DNA of 64,000 nucleotides from Euprymna scolopes (Eukaryota). The translations under genes were made by a program, and so were the position numbers. The stretch lies in assembly GCA_053919585.1 (NCBI GenBank), contig CM132816.1; one strand, 5' to 3'. Under the pieces are notes generated by a model. The model searched no databases, was not told where the DNA came from, and saw nothing but the letters and a program-made list of their open reading frames with translations. This document shows, in pieces, positions 1 through 54,220 of this stretch (within the stretch, counting starts at the first letter, position 1; every line of letters begins with the position of its first letter).

Positions 1-3000
1 TATTCTACTCAAATACTTTGTTCTTATCTTATACTTTATTCTACTCTAATACTTTATTCTAATCTAATACTTTATTCTACTCTAATACTTTATTCTAATC
101 AAATACTTTTTCTTATCAAATACTTTATTCGAATCTAATACTTTATTCGAATCTAATACTTTATTCTAATCAAATACTTTATTCTAATCTAATACTTTAT
201 TCTACTCTTATGCTTTATTCTAATCTAATACTTTATTCTAATCAAATACTTTATTCTACTCTAATACTTTATTCTAATCAAATACTTTATTCTAATCTAA
301 TACTTTATTCTAATCAAATACTTTATTCTAATCTTATACTTTATTCTAATCTAATACTTTATTCTAATCTAATACTTTATTCTAATCTAATACTTTATTC
401 TAACCTATTACTTTATTCTAATCTAATACTTTATTCTAATCAAATACTTTTCTAATCTCATACTTTATTCTAATCTAATACTTTATTCTAATCTAATACT
501 ATATTGTACTCAATTACTTTATTCGACTCAATTACTTTATTCTAATCTAATGCTTTATTCTACTCTAATGCTTTATTCTAATCTAATACTTTATACAACT
601 CTAATACTTTATTCTAATCTAATACGTTATTCTAATCTAATACTTTATTCTAATCTAATACTTTATTCTAATCTAATACTTCATTCTAATCTTATACTTT
701 ATTCTAATCTAATACTTTATTCTAATCTAATACTTTGTTCTACTCTAATACTTTATTCTAATCGAATACTTTTTTTTAATCTGATATTTATTTCTAATCT
801 AATACTTTATTCTAATCTAATACTTTATTCTAATCTAATACTTTATTCTACTCTAAAACTTTATTCTAATCTAATACATTGTTCTAATCTAATACTTTAT
901 TCTACTCTAATACTTTATTCTAATCGAATACTTTTTTTAAATCTGATACTTAATTCTAATCTAATACTGGATTCTAATCTAATACTTTATTCTACTCTAA
1001 TACTTTATTCTAATCTAATACTTTATTCTACTCTAATACTTTATTCTAATAAAATACTTTATTCTAATCAAATACTTTATTCTAATCAAATACTTTATTC
1101 TAATCAAATATTTATTCTACTCTAATACTTTATTCTAATCAAATATTTTATTCTAATAAAATACTTTATTCAAAACTAATACTTTATTCTACTCAAATAC
1201 TTAATTCTACTCTAATATTTTATTCTAATCTAATACTTTTTTCTAATCAAATCATTTATTCTAATCTAATACTTTATTCTAATCTAATACTTTATTCTAA
1301 TCGAATACTTTATTCTAATCTAATACTTTATTCTAATCTAATACTTTATTCTAATCTAATACTTTATTTTACTCAATTACATTATTCTAATCTAATACTT
1401 TATTCTAATCTAATACTTTATTCTAATCTAATACTTTATTCTAATCTAATACTTTATTCTAATCAAATACTTTATTCTAATCTAATACTTTATTGTTATC
1501 TAATACTTTATTCTACCCAATTACTTTCTTCTAATCTAATACTTTATTCTAATCAAATACTTTATTCTAATCTAATACTTTATCCTAATCTAATACTTTC
1601 TTCTAATCTAATACTTTATTCTAATCTAATACTTTATTCTAATCTAATACTTTATTCTAATCAAATACTTTATTCTAATCTAATACTTTATTCTTATCTA
1701 ATACTTTATTCTACCCAATTACTTTCTTCTAATCTAATACTTTATTCTAATCAAATACTTTATTCTAATCTAATACTTTATCCTAATCTAATACTTTATT
1801 CTTATCTAATACTTTATTCTAATCTAATACTTTATTCTAATCTTATACTTTATTCTAATCCAATACTTTATTCTAATCTAATACTTTATTCTAATCTAAT
1901 ACTTTATTCTAATCTAATACTTTATCCTAATCTAATACTGTATTTTTATCTAATACTTTATCCTAATCTTATACTTTATTCTAATCTAATACTTTATTCT
2001 AATCTAATACTTTATTCAACTCAATTACTTTATTCTAATATAATACTTCATTCTAATCTAATACTTTATTCTAACCTTATACTTAATTCTACTCTAATAC
2101 TTTATTCTAATCTGATACTTTATTCGAATCTAATACTATATTGTTCTCAATAACTTTATTCGACTCAATTACTTTATTCTAATCTAATACTTTATTCTAA
2201 TCTAATACGTTATTCTAATCTAATACTTTATTCTAATCTAATACTTAATTCTACTCTAATACTTTATTCTAATCTGATACTTTATTCGAATCTAATACTT
2301 TGTTCTAATCTAATCCTTTATTCTAATCTAATACTTTATTCTAATCTTATCCTTTATTCTAATCTAATACTTTATTCTACTCTAATACTTTATTCTACTC
2401 TAATACTTTTGTCTAATCTAATATTTTATTCTACTCTAATACTTTTTCTAATCTTATACTTTGTTCTAATCTAATACTTTATTCTTATCAAATACTTTAT
2501 CCTAATCTAATACTTTATTCTATTCTAATACTTTATTCGAAAGTAATACTTTTTTCTAATCTAATACTTTATTCTAATCAATTACTTTATTCTAATCTAA
2601 TACTTTATTTTTATCTAATACTATATTCTACTCTAATACTTTGTTCTAATCCAATCCTTTAGTCTAATCTAATACTTTTTTCTAATCTAATACTTTTTTC
2701 TTCTCTAATACTTTATTCTACTCTAATACTTTATTCTACTCTAATATTTTATTCTAATTTAATACTTTATTCTAATCTAATACTTTATTCTAATTTAATA
2801 CTTTATTCTAATCTAATACTTTATTCTAATCAAATACTTTATTCTAATCTAATACTTTATTCTAATCTAATACTTTATTTTACTCAATTACATTATTCTA
2901 ATCTAATACTTTATTCTAATCTAATACTTTATTCTAATCTAATACTTTATTCTAATCTAATACTTTATTCTAATCTAATACTTTATTCTTATCTAATACT

Positions 3001-4218
3001 TTATTCTACCCAATTACTTTCTTCTAATCTAATACTTTATTCTAGTCAAATACTTTATTCTAATCTAATACTTTATCCTAATCTAATACTTTATTCTACT
3101 CTAATACTTAATTCTACTCAAATACTGGATTCTGATATAATGCTTTATTCTACTGTAATACTTTATTCTAATCAAATACTTTATTCTCATCTAATACTTT
3201 ATACTACTCTATTACTTTATTCTAATCTGATACTTTATTCTAATCTAATACTTTGTTCTGTTCTAATACTTTATTCTAATCAAATACTTCATTCTAATCT
3301 AATACTTGATTCTAGTCAAATACTTTATTCAAATCTTATACTTTATTCTACTCTTATACTTAATTCTAATCAAATACTTTATTCTTATCAAATACTTTAT
3401 TCTTATCAAATACTTTATTCTAATCAAATACTTTATTCTAATCTAATATTTTATTCTACTCTTATACTTAATTCTAATCAAATACTTTATTCTACTCTAA
3501 TACTTTATTCTAATCTAATCTTTTTTCTAATCTAATACTTTGTTCTAATCTAATACTTTATCCTAATCTAATACTTTATTCTAATCTAATCTTTATTCTA
3601 ATCTAATACTTTATTCTAATCTAATACTTTATTCTCATCTTAGACTGTATTCTAATCCAATACTTTGTTCTACTCTACTATTTTATTCGAATCTAATACT
3701 TTATTCTACTCTAATACTTTGTTCTACTCAATTACTTTATTCTAATCTTATACTTTATTCTTATCTAATACTTTATTCTAATCTAATATTTTATTCTAAT
3801 CTAATACTTTATTCTAATCAAATACTTTACTCTAATCAAATAATTTTTTCTAATTTAATACTTTATTCTAATCTAATACTTTATATTGATCTAATACTGT
3901 TTTCTAATCAAATACTTTATTCTAATCTAATTCTTTATTCTACTCTAATACTGTATTCTAATCAAATACTTTATTCTAATTTAATACTTTATTCTAATCT
4001 AATACTTTATTCTAATCTAATACTTTATTCTAATAAAATAATCAAATACTGTATTCTACTCTAATACTTTATTCTAATCAAATACTTTATTGTACTTTAA
4101 TACTTTATTCTAATCAAATACTTTATTGTACTTTAATACTTTATTCTAATCAAATAGTTTATTATACTGTTATACTTTATTCTTATCAAATACTTTATCC
4201 TAATCTAATACTTTGTTC

Positions 4219-4814
4219 GGGTTTGTATTACTGTACACATAGATTCGAAAAAGTTGTCAGAAAACAAATATATAACAAACAAATGTTATCAAAGGCAAGA
4301 TAAGTAACTTTTTTAACAAACTGGATATATATTTTGTGTTTTTATTCAATGTAACATATTTATTCAGCTCGAAAAACATGCAGTATTTACCGATGTATTG
4401 GACAATTCAAAATGGCGTCCGACTCTCTCTTACATATGGTAAGTTCGAGAAAAGGTGTTATAAATAATAAACTAGACAAAATACTATTAAAAAATACCGA
4501 ATATATGTCAACCTACGTCACGGTAATATATATTGAGCGAATTTGCAACAGTATTTTCTCTAGTTTATTTTTTATAACACATTTCCCGAACTTACCGTGT
4601 TTAAGAGAGAGTCGGGCGCTATTTTGAATTTTCCAATACATCGGTAAAAACTGCATGTTTTTCGAGCTGAATAAACATGTTACATTGAATAAAAACACGA
4701 AAATTATATCCAGTTTGGTAGAAAAGTAACTTATCTTGCCTTTGATAACATATATTTGTTATATATTTGTTTTTGACAACTTTTTCGAATCTATGTGTAC
4801 AGTAATACAAACCC
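4219..4814. mobile_element. Foldback/MITE-like non-autonomous DNA transposon, copy 1 (~596 bp, almost wholly palindromic)
   Basis: Starts GGGTTTGTATTACTGTACACATAGATTCG and ends CGAATCTATGTGTACAGTAATACAAACCC. Inverted arms are ~270-285 bp with about 20 differences by eye, around a ~20-50 bp centre. Flanked by CTTTGTTC (4211-4218) and CTTTATTC (4815-4822), an 8-bp TSD in satellite register. Confidence 0.9.
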
Positions 4815-7800
4815 CTTTATTCTAATCTAATACTTTATTCTACTCTAATACTTTTTTCTAATCTACTTATTTTTTCTTATCAAATACGTTATTCTACTCT
4901 AATACTTTATTCTAATCTAATACTTTATTCGAATATAATACTTAATTCTACTCTAATACTTTATTGTACTTTAATACTTTATTCTAATCAAATACTTTAT
5001 TATACTGTTATACTTTATTCTTATCAAATACTTTATTCTAATCAAATACTTTATTCTAATTTAATGCTTTATTCTACTCTAACACTTTATTCTCATCTTA
5101 GACTTTATTCTAATCTAATACTTTATTCTACTCTAATACTTTATTCGAATCTAATACTTTATTCTACTCTAATACTTTATTCTAATCTAATACTTTATTC
5201 TAATCTAATACTTTATTCTACTCTAATACTTTATTCTAATCTAATACTCTATTCTATTCTAGTACTTTATTCTAATGTTAGACTTTATACTAATCTAATA
5301 CTTTATTCTTATCAAGTACTTTATTCTAATCTAATACTTTATTCTAATCTAATACTTTATTCTACTCTAATACTTTATTCAAATCTAATACTTTATTCTA
5401 ATCTAATACTTTATTCTAATCTAATACTTTATTCTAATCTAATACTTTATGCTAATCTGATACTTTATTCTAATCTAATACTTTATTCTACTCTAATACT
5501 TTATTCTAATCTACTACTTTATTCTAATCTAATACTTTATTCTAATCTAATACTTTATTATACTCAAATACTTCATTCTAATATAATACTTTATTCTAAT
5601 CTAATACTTTATTCTAATCTAATACTTTATTCTAATCTAATACATTATTCTAATCTAATACTTTATTCTAATCAAATACTTCATTCTAATCTAATACTTT
5701 ATTCTACTCTAATACTTTTTTCTACTCTAATACTTTATTTTAATCAAATAATTTATTCTAATCTAATACTTTATTCTAATCTAATACTTTATTCTACTCT
5801 AATACTTTATTCTAATCAAATATTTTATTCTAATAAAATACTTTATTCTAATCTAATACTTTATTCTAATCAAATATTTATTCTACTCTAATACTTTATT
5901 CTAATCAAATATTTTATTCTAATAAAATACTTTATTCTAAACTAATACTTTATTCTACTCAAATACTTAATTCTACTCTAATATTTTATTCTAATCTAAT
6001 ACTTTATTCTAATCAAATCCTTTATTCTAATCTAATACTTTATTCTAATCTAATACTTTAATCTTATCTAATACTTTATTCTAATCAAATACTTTATTCT
6101 AATCGACTACTTTAGTCTTATTTAATACTTTATTCTAATCTAATATTTATTCTAATCTAATACTTTATTCTAATCTAATACTTTATTCTAATCTAATACT
6201 TTATTCTAATCTAATACTTTATTTTACTCAATTACATTATTCTAATCAAATACTTTATTCTAATCTAATACTTTATTCTAAGCTAATACTTTATTCTAAT
6301 CTAATACTTTATTCTAATCTTATACTTTATTCTAATCAAATACTTTATACTAATCTAATACTTTATTCTAAGCTAATACTTTATTCTAATCTAATACTTT
6401 ATTCTAATCTAATACTTTATTCTAATCTAATACTTTATTCTACCCAATTACTTTCTTCTAATCTAATACTTTATTCTAATCAAATACTTTATTCTAATCT
6501 TATACTTTATTCTAATCTAATACTTTATTCTACTCTAATACTTTATTCTAATCTAATACTTTATTCTTATCTAATACTTTATTCTACCCAATTACTTTCT
6601 TCGTATCTAATACTGTATTCTAATCAAATACTTTATTCTAATCTAATACTTTATCCTAATCTAATACTTTATTCTAATCTAATACTTTATTCTAATCTAA
6701 TACTTTATTCTAATCTTATACTTTATTCTAATCTAATACTTTATTCTAATCTAATACTTTATTCTAATCTAATACTTTATTCTAATCTAATACTTTATCC
6801 TTATCTAATACTTTATTCTAATCTAATACTTTATTCTACTCTAATACTTTATTCTAATCTAATACTTTATTCTAACCTTATACTTAATTCTACTCTAATA
6901 CTTTATTCTAATCTGATACTTTATTCGAATCTAATACTATATTGTACTCAATAACTTTATTCGACTCAATTACTTTATTCTAATCTAATACTTTATTCTA
7001 ATCTAATACGTTATTCTAATCTAATATTTTATTCTAATCAAATACTTTTTCTAATCTTATACTTTATTCTAATCTAATACTTTATTCTTATCAAATACTT
7101 TATCCTAATCTAATACTTTATTCTATTCTAATACTTTATTCGAAAGTAATACATTATTCTACTCATATACTTTGTTCTTATCAAATACTTTATTCTACTC
7201 TAATACCATATTCTAATCTAATACTTTATTCTAATCAAATACTTTATTCTAATCGAATAATTTATTTTTATCTAATACTATATTCTACTCTAATACTTTA
7301 TTCTAATCAAATCCTTTATTCTAATCTAATACTTTTTTCTAATCTAATACTTTTTTCTACTCTAATACTTTATTCTAATCTAATACTTTATTCTAATTTA
7401 ATACTTTATTCTGATCTAATACTTTTTTCTACTCTAATACTTTATTTTAATAAAATACTTTATTCTAATCTAATACTTTACTCTAATCTAATACTTTATT
7501 CTACTCTAATACTTTATTCTACTCTAATACTTAATTCTAATAAAATACTTTATTCTAATAAAATACTTTATTTTAATCTAATACTTTATTCTGATCTAAT
7601 ACTTTATTCTAATCAAATACTTAATTCTAATCAAATACTTTATTCTAATCTAATACTTTATTCGAATCTAATACTTTATTGTACTCTAATATTTTATTCA
7701 ACTCTAAAACTGTATTCTAATCAAATCCTTTATTCTAATCTAATACTTTATTGAAATCAAATACTTTTTTCTAATCTTATACTTTATTCTAATCTAATAC

Positions 7801-10800
7801 TTTATTCTATTGACACTTTATTCTACTCTAATACTTCATTCTAATCTAATACTTTATGCAACTCTAATACTTTATTCTACTCAAATACTTTATTCTAATC
7901 TACTTCTTTTATTCTAATCTAATACTTTATTCTAATCTAATACTTTATTCTAATCTAATACTTTATTCTAATCTAATACTTTATTCTTATCTAATCCTTT
8001 ATTCTAATCTAATACTTTATTCTACTCTAATACTTTATTCTACTCTAATACTTTATTCTAATCTAATATTTTATTCTCCTTAAATACTTTACTCTAATCA
8101 AATACTTTATTCTAATCAAATACGTTATTCTACTCTAATACTGTATTCTAATCAAATACTTTGTTCTAATCAAATACTTTGTTCTTATCTTATACTTTAT
8201 TCTACTCTAATACTTTATTCTAATCTAATACTTTATTCTACTCAAATACTTTGTTCTTATCTTATACTTTATTCTACTCTAATACTTTATTCTAATCTAA
8301 TACTTTATTCTACTCTAATACTTTATTCTAATCAAATACTTTTTCTTATCAAATACTTTATTCGAATCTAATACTTTATTCGAATCTAATACTTTATTCT
8401 AATCAAATACTTTATTCTAATCTAATACTTTATTCTACTCTTATGCTTTATTCTAATCTAATACTTTATTCTAATCAAATACTTTATTCTACTCTAATAC
8501 TTTATTCTAATCAAATACTTTATTCTAATCTAATACTTTATTCTAATCAAATACTTTATTCTAATCTTATACTTTATTCTAATCTAATACTTTATTCTAA
8601 TCTAATACTTTATTCTAATCTAATACTTTATTCTAACCTATTACTTTATTCTAATCTAATACTTTATTCTAATCAAATACTTTTCTAATCTCATACTTTA
8701 TTCTAATCTAATACTTTATTCTAATCTAATACTATATTGTACTCAATTACTTTATTCGACTCAATTACTTTATTCTAATCTAATGCTTTATTCTACTCTA
8801 ATGCTTTATTCTAATCTAATACTTTATACAACTCTAATACTTTATTCTAATCTAATACGTTATTCTAATCTAATACTTTATTCTAATCTAATACTTTATT
8901 CTAATCTAATACTTCATTCTAATCTTATACTTTATTCTAATCTAATACTTTATTCTAATCTAATACTTTGTTCTACTCTAATACTTTATTCTAATCGAAT
9001 ACTTTTTTTTAATCTGATATTTATTTCTAATCTAATACTTTATTCTAATCTAATACTTTATTCTAATCTAATACTTTATTCTACTCTAAAACTTTATTCT
9101 AATCTAATACATTGTTCTAATCTAATACTTTATTCTACTCTAATACTTTATTCTAATCGAATACTTTTTTTAAATCTGATACTTAATTCTAATCTAATAC
9201 TGGATTCTAATCTAATACTTTATTCTACTCTAATACTTTATTCTAATCTAATACTTTATTCTACTCTAATACTTTATTCTAATAAAATACTTTATTCTAA
9301 TCAAATACTTTATTCTAATCAAATACTTTATTCTAATCAAATATTTATTCTACTCTAATACTTTATTCTAATCAAATATTTTATTCTAATAAAATACTTT
9401 ATTCAAAACTAATACTTTATTCTACTCAAATACTTAATTCTACTCTAATATTTTATTCTAATCTAATACTTTTTTCTAATCAAATCATTTATTCTAATCT
9501 AATACTTTATTCTAATCTAATACTTTATTCTAATCGAATACTTTATTCTAATCTAATACTTTATTCTAATCTAATACTTTATTCTAATCTAATACTTTAT
9601 TTTACTCAATTACATTATTCTAATCTAATACTTTATTCTAATCTAATACTTTATTCTAATCTAATACTTTATTCTAATCTAATACTTTATTCTAATCAAA
9701 TACTTTATTCTAATCTAATACTTTATTGTTATCTAATACTTTATTCTACCCAATTACTTTCTTCTAATCTAATACTTTATTCTAATCAAATACTTTATTC
9801 TAATCTAATACTTTATCCTAATCTAATACTTTCTTCTAATCTAATACTTTATTCTAATCTAATACTTTATTCTAATCTAATACTTTATTCTAATCAAATA
9901 CTTTATTCTAATCTAATACTTTATTCTTATCTAATACTTTATTCTACCCAATTACTTTCTTCTAATCTAATACTTTATTCTAATCAAATACTTTATTCTA
10001 ATCTAATACTTTATCCTAATCTAATACTTTATTCTTATCTAATACTTTATTCTAATCTAATACTTTATTCTAATCTTATACTTTATTCTAATCCAATACT
10101 TTATTCTAATCTAATACTTTATTCTAATCTAATACTTTATTCTAATCTAATACTTTATCCTAATCTAATACTGTATTTTTATCTAATACTTTATCCTAAT
10201 CTTATACTTTATTCTAATCTAATACTTTATTCTAATCTAATACTTTATTCAACTCAATTACTTTATTCTAATATAATACTTCATTCTAATCTAATACTTT
10301 ATTCTAACCTTATACTTAATTCTACTCTAATACTTTATTCTAATCTGATACTTTATTCGAATCTAATACTATATTGTTCTCAATAACTTTATTCGACTCA
10401 ATTACTTTATTCTAATCTAATACTTTATTCTAATCTAATACGTTATTCTAATCTAATACTTTATTCTAATCTAATACTTAATTCTACTCTAATACTTTAT
10501 TCTAATCTGATACTTTATTCGAATCTAATACTTTGTTCTAATCTAATCCTTTATTCTAATCTAATACTTTATTCTAATCTTATCCTTTATTCTAATCTAA
10601 TACTTTATTCTACTCTAATACTTTATTCTACTCTAATACTTTTGTCTAATCTAATATTTTATTCTACTCTAATACTTTTTCTAATCTTATACTTTGTTCT
10701 AATCTAATACTTTATTCTTATCAAATACTTTATCCTAATCTAATACTTTATTCTATTCTAATACTTTATTCGAAAGTAATACTTTTTTCTAATCTAATAC

Positions 10801-12451
10801 TTTATTCTAATCAATTACTTTATTCTAATCTAATACTTTATTTTTATCTAATACTATATTCTACTCTAATACTTTGTTCTAATCCAATCCTTTAGTCTAA
10901 TCTAATACTTTTTTCTAATCTAATACTTTTTTCTTCTCTAATACTTTATTCTACTCTAATACTTTATTCTACTCTAATATTTTATTCTAATTTAATACTT
11001 TATTCTAATCTAATACTTTATTCTAATTTAATACTTTATTCTAATCTAATACTTTATTCTAATCAAATACTTTATTCTAATCTAATACTTTATTCTAATC
11101 TAATACTTTATTTTACTCAATTACATTATTCTAATCTAATACTTTATTCTAATCTAATACTTTATTCTAATCTAATACTTTATTCTAATCTAATACTTTA
11201 TTCTAATCTAATACTTTATTCTTATCTAATACTTTATTCTACCCAATTACTTTCTTCTAATCTAATACTTTATTCTAGTCAAATACTTTATTCTAATCTA
11301 ATACTTTATCCTAATCTAATACTTTATTCTACTCTAATACTTAATTCTACTCAAATACTGGATTCTGATATAATGCTTTATTCTACTGTAATACTTTATT
11401 CTAATCAAATACTTTATTCTCATCTAATACTTTATACTACTCTATTACTTTATTCTAATCTGATACTTTATTCTAATCTAATACTTTGTTCTGTTCTAAT
11501 ACTTTATTCTAATCAAATACTTCATTCTAATCTAATACTTGATTCTAGTCAAATACTTTATTCAAATCTTATACTTTATTCTACTCTTATACTTAATTCT
11601 AATCAAATACTTTATTCTTATCAAATACTTTATTCTTATCAAATACTTTATTCTAATCAAATACTTTATTCTAATCTAATATTTTATTCTACTCTTATAC
11701 TTAATTCTAATCAAATACTTTATTCTACTCTAATACTTTATTCTAATCTAATCTTTTTTCTAATCTAATACTTTGTTCTAATCTAATACTTTATCCTAAT
11801 CTAATACTTTATTCTAATCTAATCTTTATTCTAATCTAATACTTTATTCTAATCTAATACTTTATTCTCATCTTAGACTGTATTCTAATCCAATACTTTG
11901 TTCTACTCTACTATTTTATTCGAATCTAATACTTTATTCTACTCTAATACTTTGTTCTACTCAATTACTTTATTCTAATCTTATACTTTATTCTAATCTA
12001 ATACTTTATTCTAATCTAATATTTTATTCTAATCTAATACTTTATTCTAATCAAATACTTTACTCTAATCAAATAATTTTTTCTAATTTAATACTTTATT
12101 CTAATCTAATACTTTATATTGATCTAATACTGTTTTCTAATCAAATACTTTATTCTAATCTAATTCTTTATTCTACTCTAATACTGTATTCTAATCAAAT
12201 ACTTTATTCTAATTTAATACTTTATTCTAATCTAATACTTTATTCTAATCTAATACTTTATTCTAATAAAATAATCAAATACTGTATTCTACTCTAATAC
12301 TTTATTCTAATCAAATACTTTATTGTACTTTAATACTTTATTCTAATCAAATACTTTATTGTACTTTAATACTTTATTCTAATCAAATAGTTTATTATAC
12401 TGTTATACTTTATTCTTATCAAATACTTTATCCTAATCTAATACTTTGTTC

Positions 12452-13047
12452 GGGTTTGTATTACTGTACACATAGATTCGAAAAAGTTGTCAGAAAACAA
12501 ATATATAACAAACAAATGTTATCAAAGGCAAGATAAGTAACTTTTTTAACAAACTGGATATATATTTTGTGTTTTTATTCAATGTAACATATTTATTCAG
12601 CTCGAAAAACATGCAGTATTTACCGATGTATTGGACAATTCAAAATGGCGTCCGACTCTCTCTTACATATGGTAAGTTCGAGAAAAGGTGTTATAAATAA
12701 TAAACTAGACAAAATACTATTAAAAAATACCGAATATATGTCAACCTACGTCACGGTAATATATATTGAGCGAATTTGCAACAGTATTTTCTCTAGTTTA
12801 TTTTTTATAACACATTTCCCGAACTTACCGTGTTTAAGAGAGAGTCGGGCGCTATTTTGAATTTTCCAATACATCGGTAAAAACTGCATGTTTTTCGAGC
12901 TGAATAAACATGTTACATTGAATAAAAACACGAAAATTATATCCAGTTTGGTAGAAAAGTAACTTATCTTGCCTTTGATAACATATATTTGTTATATATT
13001 TGTTTTTGACAACTTTTTCGAATCTATGTGTACAGTAATACAAACCC
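12452..13047. mobile_element. Foldback/MITE-like element, copy 2
   Basis: Same sequence and flanks as copy 1, offset 8233. Confidence 0.9.
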
Positions 13048-14431
13048 CTTTATTCTAATCTAATACTTTATTCTACTCTAATACTTTTTTCTAATCTACT
13101 TATTTTTTCTTATCAAATACGTTATTCTACTCTAATACTTTATTCTAATCTAATACTTTATTCGAATATAATACTTAATTCTACTCTAATACTTTATTGT
13201 ACTTTAATACTTTATTCTAATCAAATACTTTATTATACTGTTATACTTTATTCTTATCAAATACTTTATTCTAATCAAATACTTTATTCTAATTTAATGC
13301 TTTATTCTACTCTAACACTTTATTCTCATCTTAGACTTTATTCTAATCTAATACTTTATTCTACTCTAATACTTTATTCGAATCTAATACTTTATTCTAC
13401 TCTAATACTTTATTCTAATCTAATACTTTATTCTAATCTAATACTTTATTCTACTCTAATACTTTATTCTAATCTAATACTCTATTCTATTCTAGTACTT
13501 TATTCTAATGTTAGACTTTATACTAATCTAATACTTTATTCTTATCAAGTACTTTATTCTAATCTAATACTTTATTCTAATCTAATACTTTATTCTACTC
13601 TAATACTTTATTCAAATCTAATACTTTATTCTAATCTAATACTTTATTCTAATCTAATACTTTATTCTAATCTAATACTTTATGCTAATCTGATACTTTA
13701 TTCTAATCTAATACTTTATTCTACTCTAATACTTTATTCTAATCTAATACTTTATTCTAATCTAATACTTTATTCTACTCTAATACTTTATTTTACTCTA
13801 ATACTTTATTCTAATCTAATACTTTATTCTAATCTAATACTTTATTCTACTCTAATACTTTATTCTAATCTAATACTTTATTCTAATCTAATACTTTATT
13901 CTAATCTAATACTTTATTCTACTCTAATACTTTATTCTAATCTAATACTTTATTCTAATCTAATACTTTATTCTAATCTAATACTTTATTCTACTCTAAT
14001 ACTTTATTCTAATCTAATACTTTATTCTAATCTAATACTTTATTCTACTCTAATACTTTATTTTACTCTAATACTTTATTCTAATCTAATACTTTATTCT
14101 AATCTAATACTTTATTCTAATCAAATACTTTATTCTAATCTAATACTTTATTCTACTCTAATACTGTATTCTAATCAAATACTTTATTCTAATCTAATAC
14201 TTTATTCTAATCTAATACTTTATTCTGATCTAATACTTTACTCTAATAAAATAATCAAATACTGTATTCTACTCTAATACTTTATTCTAATCAAATACTT
14301 TATTGTACTTTAATACTTTATTCTAATCAAATACTTTATTGTACTTTAATACTTTATTCTAATCAAATAGTTTATTATACTGTTATACTTTATTCTTATC
14401 AAATACTTTATCCTAATCTAATACTTTGTTC

Positions 14432-15030
14432 GGGTTTGTATTACTGTACACATAGATTCGAAAAAGTTGTCAGAAAACAAATATATAACAAATAAATGTT
14501 ATCAAAGGCAAGATAAGTAACTTTTTTAACAAACTGGATATATATTTTGTGTTTTTATTCAATGTAACATATTTATTCAGCTCGAAAAACATGCAGTATT
14601 TACCGATGTATTGGACAATTCAAAATGGCGTCCGACTCTCTCTTAAATATGGTAAGTTCGAGAAAAGGTGTTATAAATTATAAACTAGACAAAATACTAT
14701 TAAAAAAATACCGAATATATGTCAACCTACGTCACGGTAATATATATTGAGCGAATTTGCAACAGTATTTTCTCTAGTTTATTTTTTATAACACCTTTTC
14801 CCGAACTTACCGTGTTTAAGAGAGAGTCGGGCGCTATTTTGAATTTTCCAATACATCGGTAAAAACTGCATGTTTTTCGAGCTGAATAAATATGTTACAT
14901 TGAATAAAAACACGAAAATTATATCCAGTTTGGTAGAAAAGTAACTTATCTTGCCTTTGATAACATATATTTGTTATATATTTGTTTTTTGACAACTTTT
15001 TCGAATCTATGTGTACAGTAATACAAACCC
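14432..15030. mobile_element. Foldback/MITE-like element, copy 3
   Basis: Same termini and same flanking satellite variants as copy 1. Confidence 0.9.
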
Positions 15031-16396
15031 CTTTATTCTAATCTAATACTTTATTCTACTCTAATACTTTTTTCTAATCTACTTATTTTTTCTTATCAAA
15101 TACGTTATTCTACTCTAATACTTTATTCTAATCTAATACTTTATTCGAATATAATACTTTATTCTACTCTAATACTTTATTGTACTTTAATACTTTATTC
15201 TAATCAAATACTTTATTATACTGTTATACTTTATTCTTATCAAATACTTTATTCTTATCAAATACTTTATTCTAATTTAATACTTTATTCTACTCTAACA
15301 CTTTATTCTCATCTTAGACTTTATTCTAATCTAATACTTTATTCTACTCTAATACTTTATTCGAATCTAATACTTTATTCTACTCTAATACTTTATTCTA
15401 ATCTAATACTTTATTCTAATCTAATACTTTATTCTACTCTAATACTTTATTCTAATCTAATACTCTATTCTATTCTAGTACTTTATTCTAATGTTAGACT
15501 TTATACTAATCTAATACTTTATTCTTATCAAGTACTTTATTCTAATCTAATACTTTATTCTAATCTAATACTTTATTCTACTCTAATACTTTATTCTAAT
15601 CTAATACTTTATTCTAATCTAATACTTTATTCTAATCTAATACTTTATTCTAATCTAATACTTTATGTTAATCTGATACTTTATTCTAATCTAATACTTT
15701 ATTCTACTCTAATACTTTATTCTAATCTAATACATTATTCTAATCTAATACTTTATTCTACTCTAATACTTTATTTTACTCTAATACTTTATTCTAATCT
15801 AATACTTTATTCTAATCTAATACTTTATTCTACTCTAATACCTTCTTCTAATCTAATACTTTATTCTAATCTAATACTTTATTCTAATCTAATACTTTAT
15901 TCTACTCTAATACTTTATTCTAATCTAATTCTTTATTCTAATCTAATACTTTATTCTAATATAATACTTTATTCTACTCTAATACTTTATTCTAATCTAA
16001 TACTTTATTCTAATCTAATACTTTATTCTACTCTAATACTTTATTTTACTCTAATACTTTATTCTAATCTAATACTTTATTCTAATCTAATACTTTATTC
16101 TAATCTAATACTTTATTCTAATCAAATACTTTATTCTAATCTAATACTTTATTCTACTCTAATACTGTATTCTAATCAAATACTTTATTCTAATCTAATA
16201 CTTTATTCTAATCTAATACTTTATTCTAATCTAATACTTTATTCTAATAAAATAATCAAATACTGTATTCTACTCTAATACTTTATTCTAATCAAATACT
16301 TTATTGTACTTTAATACTTTATTCTAATCAAATAGTTTATTTTACTGTTATACTTTATTCTTATCAAATACTTTATCCTAATCTAATACTTTGTTC

Positions 16397-16996
16397 GGGT
16401 TTGTATTACTGTACACATAGATTCGAAAAAGTTGTCAGAAAACAAATATATAACAAATAAATGTTATCAAAGGCAAGATAAGTAACTTTTTTAACAAACT
16501 GGATATATATTTTGTGTTTTTATTCAATGTAACATATTTATTCAGCTCGAAAAACATGCAGTATTTACCGATGTATTAGACAATTCAAAATGGCGTCCGA
16601 CTCTCTCTTAAATATGGTAAGTTCGAGAAAAGGTGTTATAAATAATAAACTAGACAAAATACTATTAAAAAAATACCGAATATATGTCAACCTACGTCAC
16701 GGTAATATATATATTGAGCGAATTTCTAACACTAATTTCTCTAGTTTATTTTTTATAACACCTTTTCCCGAACTTACCGTGTTTAAGAGAGAGTCGGGCG
16801 CTATTTTGAATTTTCCAATACATCGGTAAAAACTGCATGTTTTTCGAGCTGAATAAACATGTTACATTGAATAAAAACACGAAAATTATATCCAGTTTGG
16901 TAGAAAAGTAACTTATCTTGCCTTTGATAACATATATTTGTTATATATTTGTTTTTGACAACTTTTTCGAATCTATGTGTACATTAATACAAACCC
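16397..16996. mobile_element. Foldback/MITE-like element, copy 4
   Basis: Same termini and flanks, with a few private substitutions. Confidence 0.9.
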
Positions 16997-18398
16997 CTTT
17001 ATTCTAATCTAATACTTTATTCTACTCTAATACTTTTTTCTAATCTACTTAATTTTTCTTATCAAATACGTTATTCTACTCTAATACTTTATTCTAATCT
17101 AATACTTTATTCGAATATAATACTTTATTCTACTCTAATACTTTATTGTACTTTAATACTTTATTCTAATCAAATACTTTATTATACTGTTATACTTTAT
17201 TCTTATCAAATACTTTATTCTAATCAAATACTTTATTCTAATTTAATACTTCATTCTACTCTAACACTTTATTCTCATCTTAGACTTTATTCTAATCTAA
17301 TACTTTATTCTACTCTAATACTTTATTCGAATCTAATACTTTATTCTACTCTAATACTTTATTCTAATCTAATACTTTATTCTAATCTAATACTTTATTC
17401 TACTCTAATACTTTATTCTAATCTAATACTCTATTCTATTCTAGTACTTTATTCTAATGTTAGACTTTATACTAATCTAATACTTTATTCTTATCAAGTA
17501 CTTTATTCTAATCTAATACTTTATTCTAATCTAATACTTTATTCTACTCTAATACTTTATTCTAATCTAATACTTTATTCTAATCTAATACTTTATTCTA
17601 ATCTAATACTTTATTCTAATCTAATACTTTATGCTAATCTGATACTTTATTCTAATCTAATACTTTATTCTACTCTAATACTTTATTCTAATCTAATACT
17701 TTATTCTAATCTAATACTTTATTCTACTCTAATACTTTATTTTACTCTAATACTTTATTCTAATCTAATACTTTATTCTAATCTAATACTTTATTCTACT
17801 CTAATACTTTATTCTAATCTAATACTTTATTCTAATCTAATACTTTATTCTAATCTAATACTTTATTCTACTCTAATACTTTATTCTAATCTAATACTTT
17901 ATTCTAATCTAATACTTTATTCTAATCTAATACTTTATTCTACTCTAATACTTTATTCTAATCTAATACTTTATTCTAATCTAATACTTTATTCTACTCT
18001 AATACTTTATTTTACTCTAATACTTTATTCTAATCTAATACTTTATTCTAATCTAATACTTTATTCTAATCTAATACTTTATTCTAATCAAATACTTTAT
18101 TCTAATCTAATACTTTATTCTACTCTAATACTGTATTCTAATCAAATACTTTATTCTAATCTAATACTTTATTCTAATCTAATACTTTATTCTGATCTAA
18201 TACTTTATTCTAATAAAATAATCAAATACTGTATTCTACTCTAATACTTTATTCTAATCAAATACTTTATTGTACTTTAATACTTTATTCTAATCAAATA
18301 CTTTATTGTACTTTAATACTTTATTCTAATCAAATAGTTTATTATACTGTTATACTTTATTCTTATCAAATACGTTATCCTAATCTAATACTTTGTTC

Positions 18399-18992
18399 GG
18401 GTTTGTATTACTGTACACATAGATTCGAAAAAGTTGTCAGAAAACAAATATATAACAAATAAATGTTATCAAAGGCAAGTAACTTTTTTAACAAACTGGA
18501 TATATATTTTGTGTTTTTATTCAATGTAACATATTTATTCAGCTCGAAAAACATGCAGTATTTACCGATGTATTGGACAATTCAAAATGGCGTCCGACTC
18601 TCTCTTAAATATAGTAAGTTCGAGAAAAGGTGTTATAAATTATAAACTAGACAAAATACTATTAAAAAAATACCGAATATATGTCAACCTACGTCACGGT
18701 AATATATATTGAGCGAATTTCTAACAGTATTTTCTCTAGTTTATTTTTTATAACACCTTTTCCCGAACTTACCGTGTTTAAGAGAGAGTCGGGCGCTATT
18801 TTGAATTTTCCAATACATCGGTAAAAACTGCATGTTTTTCGAGCTGAATAAACATGTTACATTGAATAAAAACACGAAAATTATATCCAGTTTGGTAGAA
18901 AAGTAACTTATCTTGCCTTTGATAACATATATTTGTTATATATTTGTTTTTTGACAACTTTTTCGAATCTATGTGTACAGTAATACAAACCC
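18399..18992. mobile_element. Foldback/MITE-like element, copy 5
   Basis: Same termini and flanks. Small deletion in the left arm (GGCAAGTAAC vs GGCAAGATAAGTAAC). Confidence 0.9.
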
Positions 18993-21871
18993 CTTTATTC
19001 TAATCTAATACTTTATTCTACTCTAATACTTTTTTCTAATCTACTTATTTTTTCTTATCAAATACGTTATTCTACTCTAATACTTTATTCTAATCTAATA
19101 CTTTATTCGAATATAATACTTTATTCTACTCTAATACTTTATTGTACTTTAATACTTTATTCTAATCAAATACTTTATTATACTGTTATACTTTATTCTT
19201 ATCAAATACTTTATTCTAATCAAATACTTTATTCTAATTTAATACTTTATTCTACTCTAACACTTTATTCTCACTTTAGACTTTATTCTAATCTAATACT
19301 TTATTCTACTCTAATACTTTATTCGAATCTAATACTTTATTCTACTTTAATACTTTATTCTAATCTAATACTTTATTCTAATCTAATACTTTATTCTACT
19401 CTAATACTTTATTCTAATCTAATACTCTATTCTATTCTAGTACTTTATTCTAATGTTAGACTTTATACTAATCTAATACTTTATTCTTATCAAGTACTTT
19501 ATTCTAATCTAATACTTTATTCTACTCTAATACTTTATTCTACTCTAATACTTTATTCTAATCTAATACTTTATTCTACTCTAATACTTTATTCTAATCT
19601 AATACTTTATTCTAATCTAATACTTTATTCTACTCTAATACTTTATTTTACTCTAATACTTTATTCTAATCTAATACTTTATTCTAATCTAATACTTTAT
19701 TCTAATCTAATACTTTATTCTACTCTAATACTTTATTTTACTCTAATACTTTATTCTAATCTAATACTTTATTCTAATCTAATACTTTATTCTAATCTAA
19801 TACTTTATTCTAATCTAATACTTTATTCTAATCTAATACTTTATTCTAATCTAATACTTTATTCTACTCTAATACTTTATTCTAATCTAATACTTTATTC
19901 TAATCTAATACTTTATTCTACTCTAATACTTTATTCTAATCTAATACTTTATTCTAATCTTATACTTTATTCTAATCTCATACTTTATTTTACTCTAATA
20001 CTTTATTCTTATCTAATACTTTATTCTAATCTAATACTTTATTCTTATCTAATACTTTATTCTAATCTAATACTTTATTCTAATCTAATACTTTATTCTA
20101 ATCAAGTCCTTTATTCTAATCTAATATTTTATTCTAATCTAATACTTTATTCTACTCTAATACTTTATTCTAATCTAATACTTTATTCTAATCCAATACT
20201 TTATTCTAATCTAATACTTTATCCTAATCTAATAATTATTCTAATCCAATACTTTATTCTAATCTAATACTTTATTCTAATCAAATACTTTGTTGTACTT
20301 TAATACTTTATTCTAATCAAATACTTTATTGTACTTTAATACTTTATTCTAATCAAATACTTTATTATACTCTTATACTTTATACTTATCAAATACTTAA
20401 TTCTAATCTAATACTTTATTCTAATCTAATACTTTATTCTAATCTAATACTTTATTCTACTCTAATACTTTATTCTAATCTAATACTTTATTCTAATCTA
20501 ATACTTTATTATACTCTTGTACTTTATTCTTATCAAATACTTTATTCTAATCTAATACTTTATTATACTCTAATACTTTATTCTAATCAAATTCTTTATT
20601 CTAATCTAATACTTTATTCTAATCTAATACTTTATTCTAATCTAATACTTTATTCTACTCTAATACTTTATTCTTATCAAATACTTTATTCTTATCAAAT
20701 ACTTTATTCTAATCTAATACTTTATTCTAATCTAATACTTTAATATACTCTAATACTTTATTCTCATCTAAGACTTTATTCTTATCTAATACTTTATTCT
20801 AATCTATTACTTTATTCGAATCTAATACTTTATTCTAATCAAATACTTTATTCGAATCTAATACTTTATTCTAATCAAATACTTTATTCTAATCCAATAC
20901 TTTATTCTAATCTAATACTTTATTCTAATCAAATACTTTATTCTAATCCAATACTTTATTCTAAGTTAATATTTCATTCTAATCTAATACTTTATTCTAA
21001 TCTAATACTTTATTCTAATCTCATACTTTATTCTAATCTAATATTTATTCTAATCTAATAGTTTATTGTAATCTTATACTTTATTCTAATCTAATACTTT
21101 ATTCTAATCAAATACTTTATTCTAATCCAATACTTTATTCTAAGTTAATATTTCATTCTAATCTAATACTTTATTCTAATCTAATACTTTATTCTAATCT
21201 CATACTTTATTCTAATCAAATACTTTATTCTAATCTAATAGTTTATTGTAATCTAATACTTTATTCTACTCTAATACTTTATTCTAATCAAATACTTTAT
21301 TCTCATCTTAGACTTTATTCTAATCTAATACTTTATTCTACTCTAATACCTCATTCTACTCTAATACTTTATTCTAATCAAATACTTTATTCTAATCAAA
21401 TACTTTCTTCTAATCCAATAGTTTATTCTAATCTAATATTTCATTCTAATCAAATACTTTATTCTAATCTTATACTTTATTCTAATCTAATACTTTATTC
21501 TAATCTGATATTTATTCTAATCTAATACTTTATTCTAATCTAATACTTTATTCTAATCTAATACTTTATTCTAATCTAATACTTTATTCTAATCCAATAC
21601 TTTGTTCTAATCTAATATTTCATTCTAATCAAATACTTTATTCTAATCTTATACTTTATTCTAATCTAATACTTTATTCTAATCTGGTATTTATTCTAAT
21701 CTAATACTATATTCTAATCTAATACTTTATTCTAATCTAATACTTTATTGTTATCTAATATTTTTTCTAATCTAATATTTATTCTAATCTAATACTATAT
21801 TCTAATCTAATACTTTCTTCTAATCTAATACTTTATTCTACTCTAATATTTTTTTCTAATCTAATACTTTA

Positions 21872-22075
21872 TTCTAGACTTTTAATTTTCCTTCTGGGTT
21901 CCTGCTTTCTTAACTGTACTGACACGCAGAAGTTCAAGTGTTATGTGAACAAACATCTTGCTGCCCAACTCCCTCCATAGTATCCCTGCAACTTATGTCC
22001 CTGATAGTAACCCCCTACATCAAAATGGCACTGTGCCTTGTTTGGGGTGAAATTGTTATAAAAAACTAAAAATAA
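21872..22075 (+). mobile_element. 3' end of a CR1/L2-group LINE (ORF2 C-terminus, 3' UTR, A-rich tail) directly abutting the 18-bp satellite
   Basis: Reads SRL...LLGSCFLNCTDTQKFKCYVNKHLA*, homologous to TCFPDCTNLQKFKCNVNQHLA on the minus strand at ~52975-53045. Ends in TTATAAAAAACTAAAAATAA. Confidence 0.75.
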
Positions 22076-22469
22076 TTGTTAGTGTTTAAGGAATATCTTG
22101 AGGCGAGAAAACGAGAAGTTGTCACACAATTTTGTTAATCTATGTTTATGAAATACATATTAGGGGTTGTTTCGGATTAGAAATATTAAATTGACCGCGT
22201 AAGCATTTATAATCCGTAAAAAAAAAACTTTCGAAATTGAGAACGACATTTTCTTATGTATAATACAAATTGAAATAGGTTAAAATTTTTGGTATTTTCC
22301 TGACGAGAAAATATCAGATGAAGCCTCTGGTGTCTGCTGATACGAAGGTCATGCTTTTTCTGCCAGACAAAAACACTTAAAGTAGTTGTGATCAGTTCTG
22401 TCATGTCAAACACGAGCAACCCGTGAAGATGTTTATAGTGCAAAATAAAATCCGTAATTTGTTCAATTT

Positions 22470-30810: not shown

Positions 30811-31438
30811 ATTTCTTTGTACTTGCGAAAGATACGTAAATCCAAATTTGATGCTAAAATAACACTCGTCGGCAAAACACATAAAGCGAAGATTTATGTC
30901 ATGTAAGGGAAAAATAAAAAATCTATTCGGCATTAATTTAATTGTTTTATTTAATTTGTTGGAGATGCTGACAAACGCGTTTTATAGCTTAAATGCTTCG
31001 CCTATGGGAAAATCAAAGCAGACTGAAAAAATTATTAAGGAAATTTAACAAAGTTTTTTCAGGCACACTTGGTTGTTGTACGAAGTTGAAGTTTCGAATT
31101 AAAAGACAACGTAAAACTAGTATTGAAGCCAAAAAGAAAAGTTCCATTTCCATTGTTAGAAACAATAGACCAAGAATTAGAATAAAATTGAATAATTTAA
31201 AAAGTAGACTACTCTAAATGGGCATCACCTAGAGTCTAGGTGAAAAAAAAAACAGAATAAACAAGGGTTGGAGTGGATTTTTAACCAGGACTGAATTAAT
31301 ATTTAAGTGGCCATTCGTATAACCTTTTCACACGGGAGGAGACATTTTAAAAGTTAAATGAAGGCAAAATATTCCCGAAAATTGATTTGTCAGAAGATTA
31401 TCTGCAAGTCGAGGTAAAAAAAGAATGTACAAAGTAGT

Positions 31439-33422
31439 TAAACATTAACACAAAATTATGTGTTGATTAAACATTAACAAATAATTATGTGTTCATTAAA
31501 CATAAACACATAATTATATGTTCATTAAACATTAACACATAATTATATGTTGACTATTCATTAATACATAAGTATGTGTTGATTTAACATTAAAACAATT
31601 GTGCATTGATTTAACATTAAAACATAATTATGTGCTGATTAAACATTAAAACATAATTGTCTGTTGATTTAACATTAACACATAATTATGCATTGATTTA
31701 ACATTAACACATAATTATGTGTTGATTAAACAGTAACACATAATTGTGTGTTGATTTAACATTAAAACATAATTATGTGTTGATTAAAACTTAACACATA
31801 ATTATGTGTTGATTAAAACTTAACACATAATTATGTGTTGATTAAAACTTAACACATAATTATGTGTTGATTAAACAGTAACACATAATTGTGTGTTGAT
31901 TTAACATTAACACGTAATTATGTGTTGATTAAAACTTAACACATAATTATGTGTTGATTAAAACTTAACACATAATTATGTGTTGATTAAACAGTAACAC
32001 ATAATTGTGTGTTGATTAAAACATTAACACACAATTATGTGTTAATGTTTAATCAACACACTATGTGCTGATTAAGCATTGACACATAATTATGCGTTGA
32101 TTAATACATTAACACATCATTATGTGTCGATTACACATTAACACGTAATTATGGGTTGATTAAACATTAACATACATAATTATATGTTGATTAAACATTA
32201 ACACACATAATTATGTGTTGATTAAATATTAAAACATAATTATGCGTTGATTACACATTAACATATAATTATGTGTTGATTACACATTAACACATAATTA
32301 TGTGTTGATTAAAACATTAACACACATAATTATGTGTTGATTAAAACATTAACACACATAAGTATATGTTGATTAAACATTAACACACATAAGTATATGT
32401 TGATTAAACATTAACACACATAATTATATGTTGATTAAACATTAACACACATAATTATATGTTGATTAAACATTAACACACATAATTGCGTGTTGATTAA
32501 AACAATAACATACAATTTTATGTGATGACTAAAACATTAACACACATAATTATATGTTGATTAAACATTAACACACATAATTATATGTTGATTAAACATT
32601 AACACACATAATTGCGTGTTGATTAAAACAATAACATACAATTTTATGTGATGACTAAAACATTAACACACATAATTATGTGTTGATTAAACATTAACAC
32701 ACATAATCATATGTTGATTAAACATTAACACACATAAGTATATGTTGATTAAACATTAACACACATAATTATGTGTTGATTAAAACATTAACACACATAA
32801 TTATATGTTGATTAAAACATTAACACACATAATTATATGTTGATTAAACATTAACACACATAATTATATGTTGATTAAACATTAACACACATAATTATAT
32901 GTTGATTAAAACAATAACACACATAATTATATGTTGATTAAACATTAACACACATAATTATATGTTGATTAAAACAATAACACACATAATTATATGTTGA
33001 TTAAACATTAACACACATAATTACGTGTTGATTAAAACAATAACACACATAATTTTATGTGATTACTAAAACATTAACACACATAATTATGTGTTGATTA
33101 AAACATTAACACACATAATTATATGTTGATTAAAACATTAACACACATAATTATGTGTTGATTAAACATTAACACACATAATTATATTGTTGATTAAACA
33201 TTAACACACATAATTACGTGTTGATTAAAACAATAACACACATAATTTTATGTGATGACTAAAACATCAACACACATAATTATGTGTTGATTAAAACATT
33301 AACACACATAATTATGTGTTGATTAATCATTAACACACATAATTATATGTTGATTAAAACATTAACACACATAATTATGTGTTGATTAAACATTAACACA
33401 CATAATTATGTGTAGATTAAAA
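31439..33422. repeat. 29-32-bp satellite AACATTAAC(AC)ACATAATTATGTGTTGATTA with a palindromic core, ~65 units
   Basis: Direct periodicity. Core AACACATAATTATGTGTT is its own reverse complement. Mostly 29-bp units on the left and 31-32-bp units on the right. Confidence 0.97.
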
Positions 33423-52964: not shown

Positions 52965-54220
52965 AAAGAATCCTGCAAGATGTTGGTTTACGTTACATTT
53001 AAACTTCTGCAGGTTAGTACAGTCAGGGAAGCAGGTAACATGAAAGGAATTCCTATTGATGTTCGAGGGAAAAAATTGTTAGAGTAGAAAGCTTTCTGGC
53101 ATTTAAGGACTTCAACAGTGAAAGGCGAGATTTTGCTATAGAGCGGGTTTGTCGGGAATATGTATGTCGAGGTACAACGAGTTCACCAGGGCACATTTCA
53201 TTAAAAAATATGTAATACAGGCACAGAAACACAACATTAAGTTGATGGAACAGGAGCTGGAGCTTAGTTGACAAAGTGGGAACATTTATCAAATTGAAAA
53301 CTTTTGTGTACCCTATCCAAGACGGAGAGGTTAGTGGTAAATGCACCAGCCCAGATGTGACAACAATACTCCGTGTATGGGCGAATGGTGGCCTTGTAGC
53401 GGTACAGAAGATACTCTCAGGTGTGAAAAGTATTCGCGCTCGATAGGGGCAACCTACCTTTTTTTGCAGAAGCCACCGAAATGTCCTCAATGTATTTATT
53501 ACAGTTCATATTGCCCGAGGAGTTTGAAGGAAGAATTCTTAGGTAGGGTGTTATTTGTCATGGATGTCATTGGTTGAAGAGGCGTTTTGTAATTGTTAAA
53601 GGAGAGCAGCTTAGTCTTACTAGCATTTAACGTTACCATCTATTTGCGGTCTCATTCCATTACGGTTTGGAAGTCATTTTCTAACAATTTTGCCATTGTC
53701 TTAGATTTGTGTACATCAGTTTTCTCTCGTGCATGTCATAGAGCGTTGTATCATCAACAAATATACCGACCACGGACACAATATTATCAGGGAGGTCGTT
53801 TATGAATATCAGGAATAATAGTGGTTCAAGGGTCGATCTTTGAGGCACTCTCACATTAATGTTATGTTGCTTGGATATAGTTCTATTAATGACAATCTGG
53901 ATGTCCCTATTTTCTAAGAAAGATCTAATTATATTTAGTATATGTACGATTAAATTTTCATTAGCAGTCCTTCGTGCCAGACTTTGTCAAAAAGTATGGA
54001 TATATCAAGGACTACAGCCCTGGCTTCGCCCGCATTGTCCGGTGCATGGTGTATGCGTTGGAAGATGACTGTTAAAATATCCACAGTAGAACGGCATTGC
54101 CTAAATCCATGCAGTTTGTCAGAGAAAAGATCAGCTTTTGCGAGGTGGTGTACTAGTACTTGATTAAGGTCTCAGAGATTTTAGCGAAGAGTGAGAAGAG
54201 ACTGATAGACCGATAATTGA
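52965..54220 (-). mobile_element. CR1/L2-group LINE ORF2 3' half (degenerate); its 5' side runs into the 32-bp satellite
   Basis: On the minus strand: NYRSISLFSLFAKISETLI, VLDIS..FDKVWH, IFVDDTT, YKATIRPYTEYCCHIWAGA, FYSNNFFPRTS...CFPDCTNLQKFKCNVNQHL. Confidence 0.9.

What the first reader, a model, noticed from the sequence alone, without database searches (positions are those of the whole stretch)
21820..22075. The 22-kb 18-bp satellite appears to derive from the FYSN motif at a LINE 3' end
The array ends TTC TAC TCT AAT ATT TTT TTC [one unit] TAGACT...TCC TGC TTT CTT AAC TGT ACT GAC ACG CAG AAG TTC AAG TGT. The related LINE at 52975-53095 (minus strand) reads TTC TAC TCT AAC AAT TTT TTC CCT CGA ACA...ACC TGC TTC CCT GAC TGT ACT AAC CTG CAG AAG TTT AAA TGT. 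The monomer variant TTCTACTCTAATACTTTA therefore matches the LINE codons expected at exactly this junction, with TTCTA as microhomology. This implies that the minor variant is ancestral and the now-dominant TTCTAATCTAAT is derived (inference).
Basis: partly seen in the sequence, partly recalled or inferred. Interest (0 to 1): 0.7.

Follow-up and report, generated by a model that had tools for sequence, protein, structure and literature searches.

The report
Satellite born inside one dead LINE
A 32-kb block of about 1,800 tandem 18-base repeats grew in place from six codons near the end of the reverse-transcriptase gene of one old, broken jumping element, whose two halves still flank it; this is a very clean example of a known way that satellite DNA arises.

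Summary

- **Extent:** the 18-bp array runs 10.3 kb upstream of the window, 32,198 bp in all.
- **Left flank:** it is the same LINE's ORF2 on the plus strand. It ends at the codon before the F of FYSN.
- **Right flank:** it is the rest of that ORF2, its stop codon, the 3' UTR and an A-rich tail.
- **Collinearity:** in six intact copies the two flanks lie exactly 26 bases apart.
- **Monomer:** the minor (C) variant matches the LINE 18-mer at that spot 16/18, in phase. No shuffle out of 200,000 reached this.
- **Polarity:** 37 of 38 LINE copies have C at monomer position 6, so the minor variant is most likely ancestral.
- **Single locus:** all 888 genome-wide dimer matches lie in this one array.
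- **Recurrence:** about 43,500 LINE copies carry the site once. Five carry an exact or near-exact 2x duplication of the same 18-mer. One other copy carries an independent array of about 390 bp (about 21 units) with both junctions intact.

- The founding direct repeat is CTTC, not TTCTA.
- The T-rich penultimate unit is no closer to the LINE than ordinary C-variant units.
- 13 LINE bases were lost at the right junction.

The kind is known (LINE-ORF2-derived satellites). The scan already found two similar cases in this genome.

The parts
1..21876 (+). Window part of the 18-bp satellite array. The whole array is C34:29005679-29037876, 32,198 bp, about 1,790 units, and starts 10,322 bp before the window. 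Its left flank (outside the window, L012:~9100-9678) is the 5'-truncated ORF2 part of the parent LINE.
   Evidence: TRF; upstream loci; unit segmentation; left-flank homology to 38 LINE copies; translation of the left flank
21836..21856 (+). It is unique in the array but no closer to the LINE than ordinary C-variant units.
21872..21879 (+). Right junction TTCTA|GAC. CTA is shared between the unit start and the LINE's TGCTAGAC. 13 LINE bases are absent here.
21874..21980 (+). C-terminal remnant of the parent LINE's ORF2. It is frameshifted around 21900. Residues 21903-21980 read CFLNCTDTQKFKCYVNKHLAAQLPP then stop.
21981..22066 (+). 3' UTR and short A-rich tail of the parent LINE. Family homology and read depth both stop at about 22066-22083.
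52975..54187 (-). It carries the FYSN site once.

Best explanation
One old, 5'-truncated copy of a very abundant non-LTR retrotransposon (LINE) underwent an 18-bp tandem duplication inside the end of its ORF2. The duplicated segment covers the codons F-Y-S-N-S-F. In the element it is bounded by the direct repeat CTTC at 18-bp spacing, the kind of layout that favours slippage or microhomology-mediated duplication (inferred). The small repeat then grew at the DNA level to about 1,790 units (32 kb). Growth was first unit by unit, later by unequal exchange of blocks of about 2, 4.5 and 8.2 kb. On the way it captured a 620-bp foreign insert into a higher-order unit. An early C-to-A change at monomer position 6 spread to about three quarters of the units, so the minor C variant keeps the LINE state. 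A secondary small deletion removed 13 LINE bases at the right boundary. The array is a neutral by-product of a dead element; no function is implied.

Shown: both flanks are one collinear LINE; the monomer is homologous to the missing LINE segment in phase; the array is at a single locus; the same site has duplicated or expanded in other copies; there are nested large duplications.

Inferred: the slippage mechanism of the first step, the order of events, and neutrality.
For: - Left flank is LINE ORF2 on the plus strand, ending one codon before FYSN.
- Right flank is the rest of ORF2, the stop, the UTR and the tail.
- On six intact copies the two flanks are exactly 26 bases apart, and both have similar identity of 81-87%.
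- The minor monomer is 16/18 to the LINE 18-mer, in phase; 0/200,000 shuffles reach this, and it is the best match position in nearly all copies scanned.
- The genome-wide dimer count (888, all forward) equals the count in this array.
- About 43,500 LINE copies carry the site once.
- Five copies carry a 2x duplication of the same 18-mer. They sit in different genomic contexts, with different 5' ends and in at least two subfamilies.
- One other copy (L055) carries an independent array of about 390 bp and about 21 units. Both LINE junctions are intact and a private T at position 6 is shared by its units; it too is single-locus.
- Control 18-mers from the same element, with 3-bp direct repeats, give 1 and 0 dimers.
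- Internal lags of 8,233, 4,499 and about 1,980 bp show block duplications.
- Contigs from public runs carry satellite words at high depth. The unique right flank occurs at depth 15 in one run.
Against: - No target-site duplication around the whole LINE could be found. That the two halves were once a single insertion therefore rests on collinearity, not on a TSD.
- The right junction is not the simple product of an 18-bp duplication, since 13 bases are missing. An extra event must be assumed.
- Positions 14 and 18 of nearly all units differ from the family majority (C and A rather than G and C). These changes must predate the expansion or have been homogenised.
- C-variant units are not enriched at the array edges.
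- No read or contig bridging a junction was shown.
Confidence: 0.9

Rival explanations
1. A 5'-truncated LINE inserted into, or at the edge of, a pre-existing satellite. Chance microhomology (TTCTA) sits at its 5' junction, and the similarity of monomer and LINE is coincidental.
For: The right junction shows a short overlap (CTA/TTCTA). The LINE is missing 13 bases there. No TSD was found that would prove a single intact insertion.
Against: - The other side of the array is the upstream part of the same LINE, on the same strand and exactly collinear.
- The satellite exists at no other place in 5.9 Gb.
- The 16/18 in-phase identity is not reached by any of 200,000 shuffles.
Confidence: 0.02
2. 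The seed (two or a few units) was made by the element's own reverse transcriptase slipping on the CTTC repeat during insertion, or was inherited from a master copy that carried the duplication. Only the later growth happened at the DNA level.
For: Five dispersed copies with different 5' truncation points carry two units that are identical or nearly so. This is what a duplication made at or before insertion would look like.
Against: - The dimer copies fall in at least two subfamilies.
- The pattern search itself selects for near-identical units.
- In L055 the units share a private change (T at position 6), and in this array nearly all units share C14 and A18 against the family. This fits duplication after the copy had begun to diverge.
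- The data here do not decide between RT and DNA polymerase for the first step.
Confidence: 0.2
3. The array formed elsewhere (for example as an extrachromosomal circle or at another locus that has since been lost) and integrated into this LINE by homology at the 18-mer.
For: Homology-guided integration would also give in-phase junctions.
Against: There is no second locus anywhere in the assembly. Other copies of the LINE show the intermediate in-place stages. This reading still derives the satellite from the LINE.
Confidence: 0.03
4. Assembly artefact: the array, or its length, is produced by misassembly of long reads.
For: No bridging record was listed over the right junction. Array length in assemblies is often unreliable.
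Against: - The units are diverged (78% matches) and show structured higher-order blocks and inserted foreign DNA.
- Satellite words occur at high depth in contigs of several public runs.
- Both junctions fall at matching LINE positions, which an artefact would not produce.
Confidence: 0.03

Closest known systems
Satellites derived from LINE ORF2 or 3' ends (PROsat from L1 ORF2 in Phodopus, Pvc20 from L1 ORF2 in harbour seal, chicken HinfI/SCR1 from CR1 3' UTR plus part of ORF2, the common cetacean satellite from the L1 3' end), as tabulated in the review PMC9659126
   Same: A tandem array whose monomer is a piece of a LINE, here of ORF2 coding sequence.
   Different: - The monomer is only 18 bp (six codons).
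- The array is at a single locus.
- The parent copy is still attached on both sides at base-pair resolution.
- 2x and roughly 21x stages exist at the same site in other copies.
- The published cases are mostly inferred from monomer similarity alone (as described in that review; I did not read the primary papers).
Tandem TE dimers by double insertion as satellite seeds (McGurk and Barbash 2018, PMC5932611; title and abstract seen)
   Same: A transposable element supplies the substrate from which a tandem array grows by unequal exchange.
   Different: In that model the unit is a whole or truncated element created by two insertions at one site. Here the unit is a short internal segment duplicated between 4-bp direct repeats, and no second insertion is involved.
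Other TE-born satellites noted by this scan in the same genome (s1-279859: 62.6-kb, 74-bp array from inside a LINE RT gene; s1-244858: 8.9-kb, 29-bp array from a LINE tail)
   Same: Same genome and same overall process: in-place growth from one dead LINE copy with the parent attached.
   Different: A different LINE site and a shorter monomer. This case adds independent repeats of the birth at the same site in other copies. I did not re-test those notes.

Membership tests
TE-derived satellite DNA (LINE ORF2-derived) | Long head-to-tail array of a short unit | tested here: met
   18-bp period, about 1,790 units, 32,198 bp
TE-derived satellite DNA (LINE ORF2-derived) | Monomer homologous to a segment of a transposable element, beyond chance | tested here: met
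   16/18 in phase with the LINE 18-mer; 0 of 200,000 shuffles reach this
TE-derived satellite DNA (LINE ORF2-derived) | Physical continuity with the parent element on both sides of the array | tested here: met
   The flanks map 26 bases apart on six intact copies, on the same strand
Classical satellite DNA | Many arrays, or very large blocks, spread over chromosomes | tested here: not met
   All 888 genome-wide dimer matches lie in this one array. It is better called a single-locus satellite-like array.
Non-LTR retrotransposon (LINE) | Reverse-transcriptase domain in the element | tested here: met
   RVT_1, E = 2.8e-23, in a 394-aa open stretch of a family copy that ends with the same C-terminal motif. 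The parent copy itself keeps only degenerate sequence downstream of most of the RT.
Non-LTR retrotransposon (LINE) | Dispersed high-copy family with variable 5' truncation and a common 3' end with an A-rich tail | tested here: met
   About 43,500 sites on both strands; common 3' end; different 5' ends
Non-LTR retrotransposon (LINE) | Target-site duplication around this copy | tested here: inconclusive
   No shared word longer than 6 bases between the two outer flanks. The copy is old (81-87% identity to the family).
Non-LTR retrotransposon (LINE) | Clade (Jockey, CR1 or other) | not tested
   The FFPRT..WN..P....FK C-terminal motif and the A-rich tail recall Jockey/CR1-group elements from memory only.
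5'-truncated LINE inserted into an older satellite by microhomology | Satellite, not LINE, on the far side of the array, and the satellite present independently of the LINE | tested here: not met
   LINE ORF2 lies on the far side. There is no other locus of the satellite.

The most novel reading that the evidence does not exclude
The CTTC-bounded 18-mer at the FYSN codons of this LINE is a recurrent birth site for tandem arrays. With about 43,500 copies it acts as a genome-wide seed bank, and all stages are preserved (1x, 2x, about 21x, about 1,790x). More broadly, this very large genome may turn short pieces of TE coding sequence into single-locus satellites unusually often. Three such arrays were flagged in this one 64-kb window and two more elsewhere.
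Probability: 0.35. Interest if true: 0.55.

Novelty: new member of a known kind. Interest (0 to 1): 0.45.

Why it matters
How satellites start is usually inferred from vague monomer-to-TE similarity. Here the whole path can be read at base-pair resolution:
- the parent element is split exactly at the amplified segment;
- the 4-bp direct repeat could have mediated the first duplication;
- other copies are frozen at the two-unit stage and at the roughly 21-unit stage;
- the large array shows later block duplications.

This gives a polarity for monomer variants from thousands of outgroup copies. It also gives a natural series for measuring how often a seed forms and how often it takes off. It has no evident functional meaning for the organism.

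Tried and rejected
- **TSD search** around the composite LINE: nothing longer than 6 bases.
- **Ancestral variants at the array edges:** neither the C variant nor closeness to the LINE is enriched there. The family states G14 and C18 are rare and not clearly linked to C6 once higher-order copies are discounted.
- **Remnants of the missing 13 LINE bases, or of the upstream LINE, inside the array** (which would suggest a longer original unit): none.
- **The T-rich penultimate unit as a surviving LINE residue:** rejected as evidence, because it is no closer to the family than ordinary C units.
- **Reads:** only short contigs were available and none was shown to bridge the junction. Depths are summed over contigs and cannot give copy number. 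Coded organism names prevent saying whether the satellite is shared between species.
- **Technical failures:** a fuzzy-regex extraction timed out.
- **Literature:** searches found reviews of TE-derived satellites but nothing on cephalopods.
- **Not done:** no full-length consensus of the LINE was built. The LINE clade was not determined, and the large protein search was not spent on it.

Full report
**What is there**

TRF reports an 18-bp array over window 1-21876 (1,212 copies, 78% matches). The window is G000:C34:29016001-29080000 in a 5.9-Gb, 925-contig assembly. Upstream sequence fetched shows that the array continues for 10.3 kb before the window. It starts at L012:9679 = C34:29005679. 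The whole array is therefore 32,198 bp and about 1,790 units.

The commonest unit is TTCTAATCTAATACTTTA (554 exact copies). The second commonest differs only by C at position 6 (159 exact copies). Over all 18-bp units, position 6 is A in 1,166 and C in 381.

**Right flank**

From window 21874 to about 22066 the sequence matches the 3' end of a very abundant repeat, at 88-90% identity for the 40 copies scored. Aligned copies show the end of an ORF. The window reads CFLNCTDTQKFKCYVNKHLAAQLPP and then a stop at 21903-21980. An 85-bp UTR and a short A-rich tail follow.

A family copy with a 394-aa open stretch ends in the same motif and carries RVT_1 at E = 2.8e-23. The repeat is therefore a non-LTR retrotransposon. 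Its clade was not determined.

The 580 bp before the array (L012, about 9100-9678) are homologous to the same LINE family, on the plus strand. This piece carries an internal deletion of about 190 bp and is 5'-truncated near 9100. It ends ...GATGTAAGAAAACC, and the array follows directly. The family reads ...GATGTAAGAAAGCC at that point and then the 18-mer TTCTACTCTAATAGTTTC (38 copies).

In protein terms the flank ends ...IPRCKKT and then the F codon that opens the array. The open family copy reads ...IPRCRRS-FY.. at the same place.

Mapped onto six intact copies, the left flank ends at subject position 1725 and the right flank starts at 1752. That is exactly 26 bases apart. Both flanks show similar identity to the family, 81-87%. 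The array therefore sits inside one LINE copy and replaces a stretch of 26-31 bases.

**Monomer versus the replaced LINE stretch**

The first 18 bases of the replaced stretch match the C-variant monomer at 16 of 18 positions, in the phase fixed by the left junction. Both are followed by TTC. No shuffle out of 200,000 reaches this score; for the A variant (15/18), 6 do. When the monomer is slid in all rotations over about 490 bp of each family copy, this site is the best match in nearly every copy.

**Single locus**

A two-unit pattern allowing two mismatches has 888 matches in the whole genome, all on the forward strand. The same count made on my local copy of this array is also 888. The satellite therefore exists nowhere else in the assembly. 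That removes any outside source for it. It also rules out a LINE landing in an older, dispersed satellite.

**Polarity of the variants**

Position 6 is C in 37 of 38 family copies.

There is no support from inside the array. C units make up 16-32% of units in every full 2-kb bin, with no enrichment at the edges. Positions 14 and 18 (C and A in nearly all units, G and C in the family) must have changed in the founder copy or early in the expansion.

**The first step**

In the element the 18-mer is bounded by CTTC...CTTC at 18-bp spacing. That is a plausible substrate for slippage or microhomology-mediated duplication (inference). This step has happened repeatedly.

| Pattern searched | Copies found |
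|---|---|
| FYSN site present once (37-nt pattern, up to 3 mismatches) | about 43,500 |
| Same 18-mer duplicated 2x, exact or nearly so | 5 |
| Same 18-mer expanded to about 21 units (L055) | 1 |
| Control 18-mers from the same element, 3-bp direct repeats, as dimers | 1 and 0 |

- The five dimer copies lie on C3, C37, C33, C43 and C36. They have different surroundings and different 5' ends, and they belong to at least two subfamilies.
- L055 (C12, minus strand) carries an array of about 390 bp and about 21 units. It is flanked on the left by ...GGAAGGCT and on the right by the intact continuation of the LINE. Its first units share a private T at position 6, and that array is also single-locus.
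- The control result hints that the FYSN site is favoured. With only two controls this is only suggestive.

**Later growth**

Distances between rare 24-mers show three kinds of block duplication:
- an 8,233-bp duplication covering about 8 kb of the array;
- a 4,499-bp duplication;
- four to five copies of a higher-order block of about 1.97-2.0 kb.

Five copies of a 620-bp non-satellite insert ride in these blocks. Growth was therefore by nested unequal exchange at the DNA level.

**The right junction needs one extra event**

After the last unit the sequence goes TTCTA|GAC. The 13 LINE bases TTCCCCAGAACTG are missing, and no trace of them occurs in the array. The simplest reading is a small deletion between a unit start and the similar TGCTA of the LINE.

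This is possible but needs more steps. That unit is also no closer to the family than other C units are. The L055 array keeps this stretch intact.

**Reads**

Only contig-level data were available.
- The LINE tail has enormous summed depth in runs of three coded organisms.
- Satellite words are present at high depth in three of the four runs.
- The unique right flank appears at depth 15 in one run, in a 2,245-base contig with four differences.
- No bridging record was listed, so the junctions themselves remain supported only by the assembly.

**Context and verdict**

LINE-derived satellites, including ORF2-derived ones, are on record in a review table (PMC9659126). Seeds made by double insertion of whole elements are a different known route (PMC5932611). 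Earlier notes of this scan describe two similar cases elsewhere in this genome and call it a cephalopod. I did not test those notes.

It is an unusually clean new member of a known kind. It adds preserved intermediate stages and repeated births at the same LINE site.

Noticed in passing
L055:1149-1537 (G000:C12, about 51878660-51879050, minus strand): A second, independent array of about 390 bp and about 21 units, grown from the same 18-mer in another LINE copy of a different subfamily. Both LINE junctions are intact and its first units share a private T at position 6. It is single-locus.
   Followed up: yes
L045, L046, L047, L048, L054 (C3:143977006, C37:1054909, C33:74963087, C43:38658026, C36:77893282): Five LINE copies carry exactly two tandem copies of the FYSN 18-mer. 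About 43,500 copies carry it once. Two control 18-mers gave 1 and 0 dimers.
   Followed up: partly
L007, at the FYSN site (alignment): One family copy lacks about 19 bases that cover the same 18-mer. This may be the reciprocal deletion product at the CTTC direct repeat.
   Followed up: no
window 4209-4829, 12439-13059, 14419-15039, 16389-17009, 18389-19009: Five copies of a 620-bp non-satellite insert inside the array. They are carried along by the 8.2-kb duplication and the higher-order block of about 2 kb.
   Followed up: partly
window 54188-64000 with the LINE at 52975-54187 (minus strand): On the minus strand the 32-bp satellite reads NYRSISLFPL, and it abuts the 5' side of the comparator LINE, where FSLFAKISETLI follows. 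One family copy (L031) reads NYRLISLLPL at its RT motif, with roughly two thirds DNA identity to the monomer by eye.
   Followed up: partly
window 31438-33421 and 37448-39242: Two more tandem arrays: 29-bp units x65 and 20-bp units x90. The first was flagged earlier as grown inside a Gypsy RT (s1-288582). Neither was examined here.
   Followed up: no
L012:8629-9077: The sequence just upstream of the parent LINE's truncated 5' end matches another dispersed repeat that is also present in L002. The LINE therefore lies next to, or in, an older repeat.
   Followed up: no
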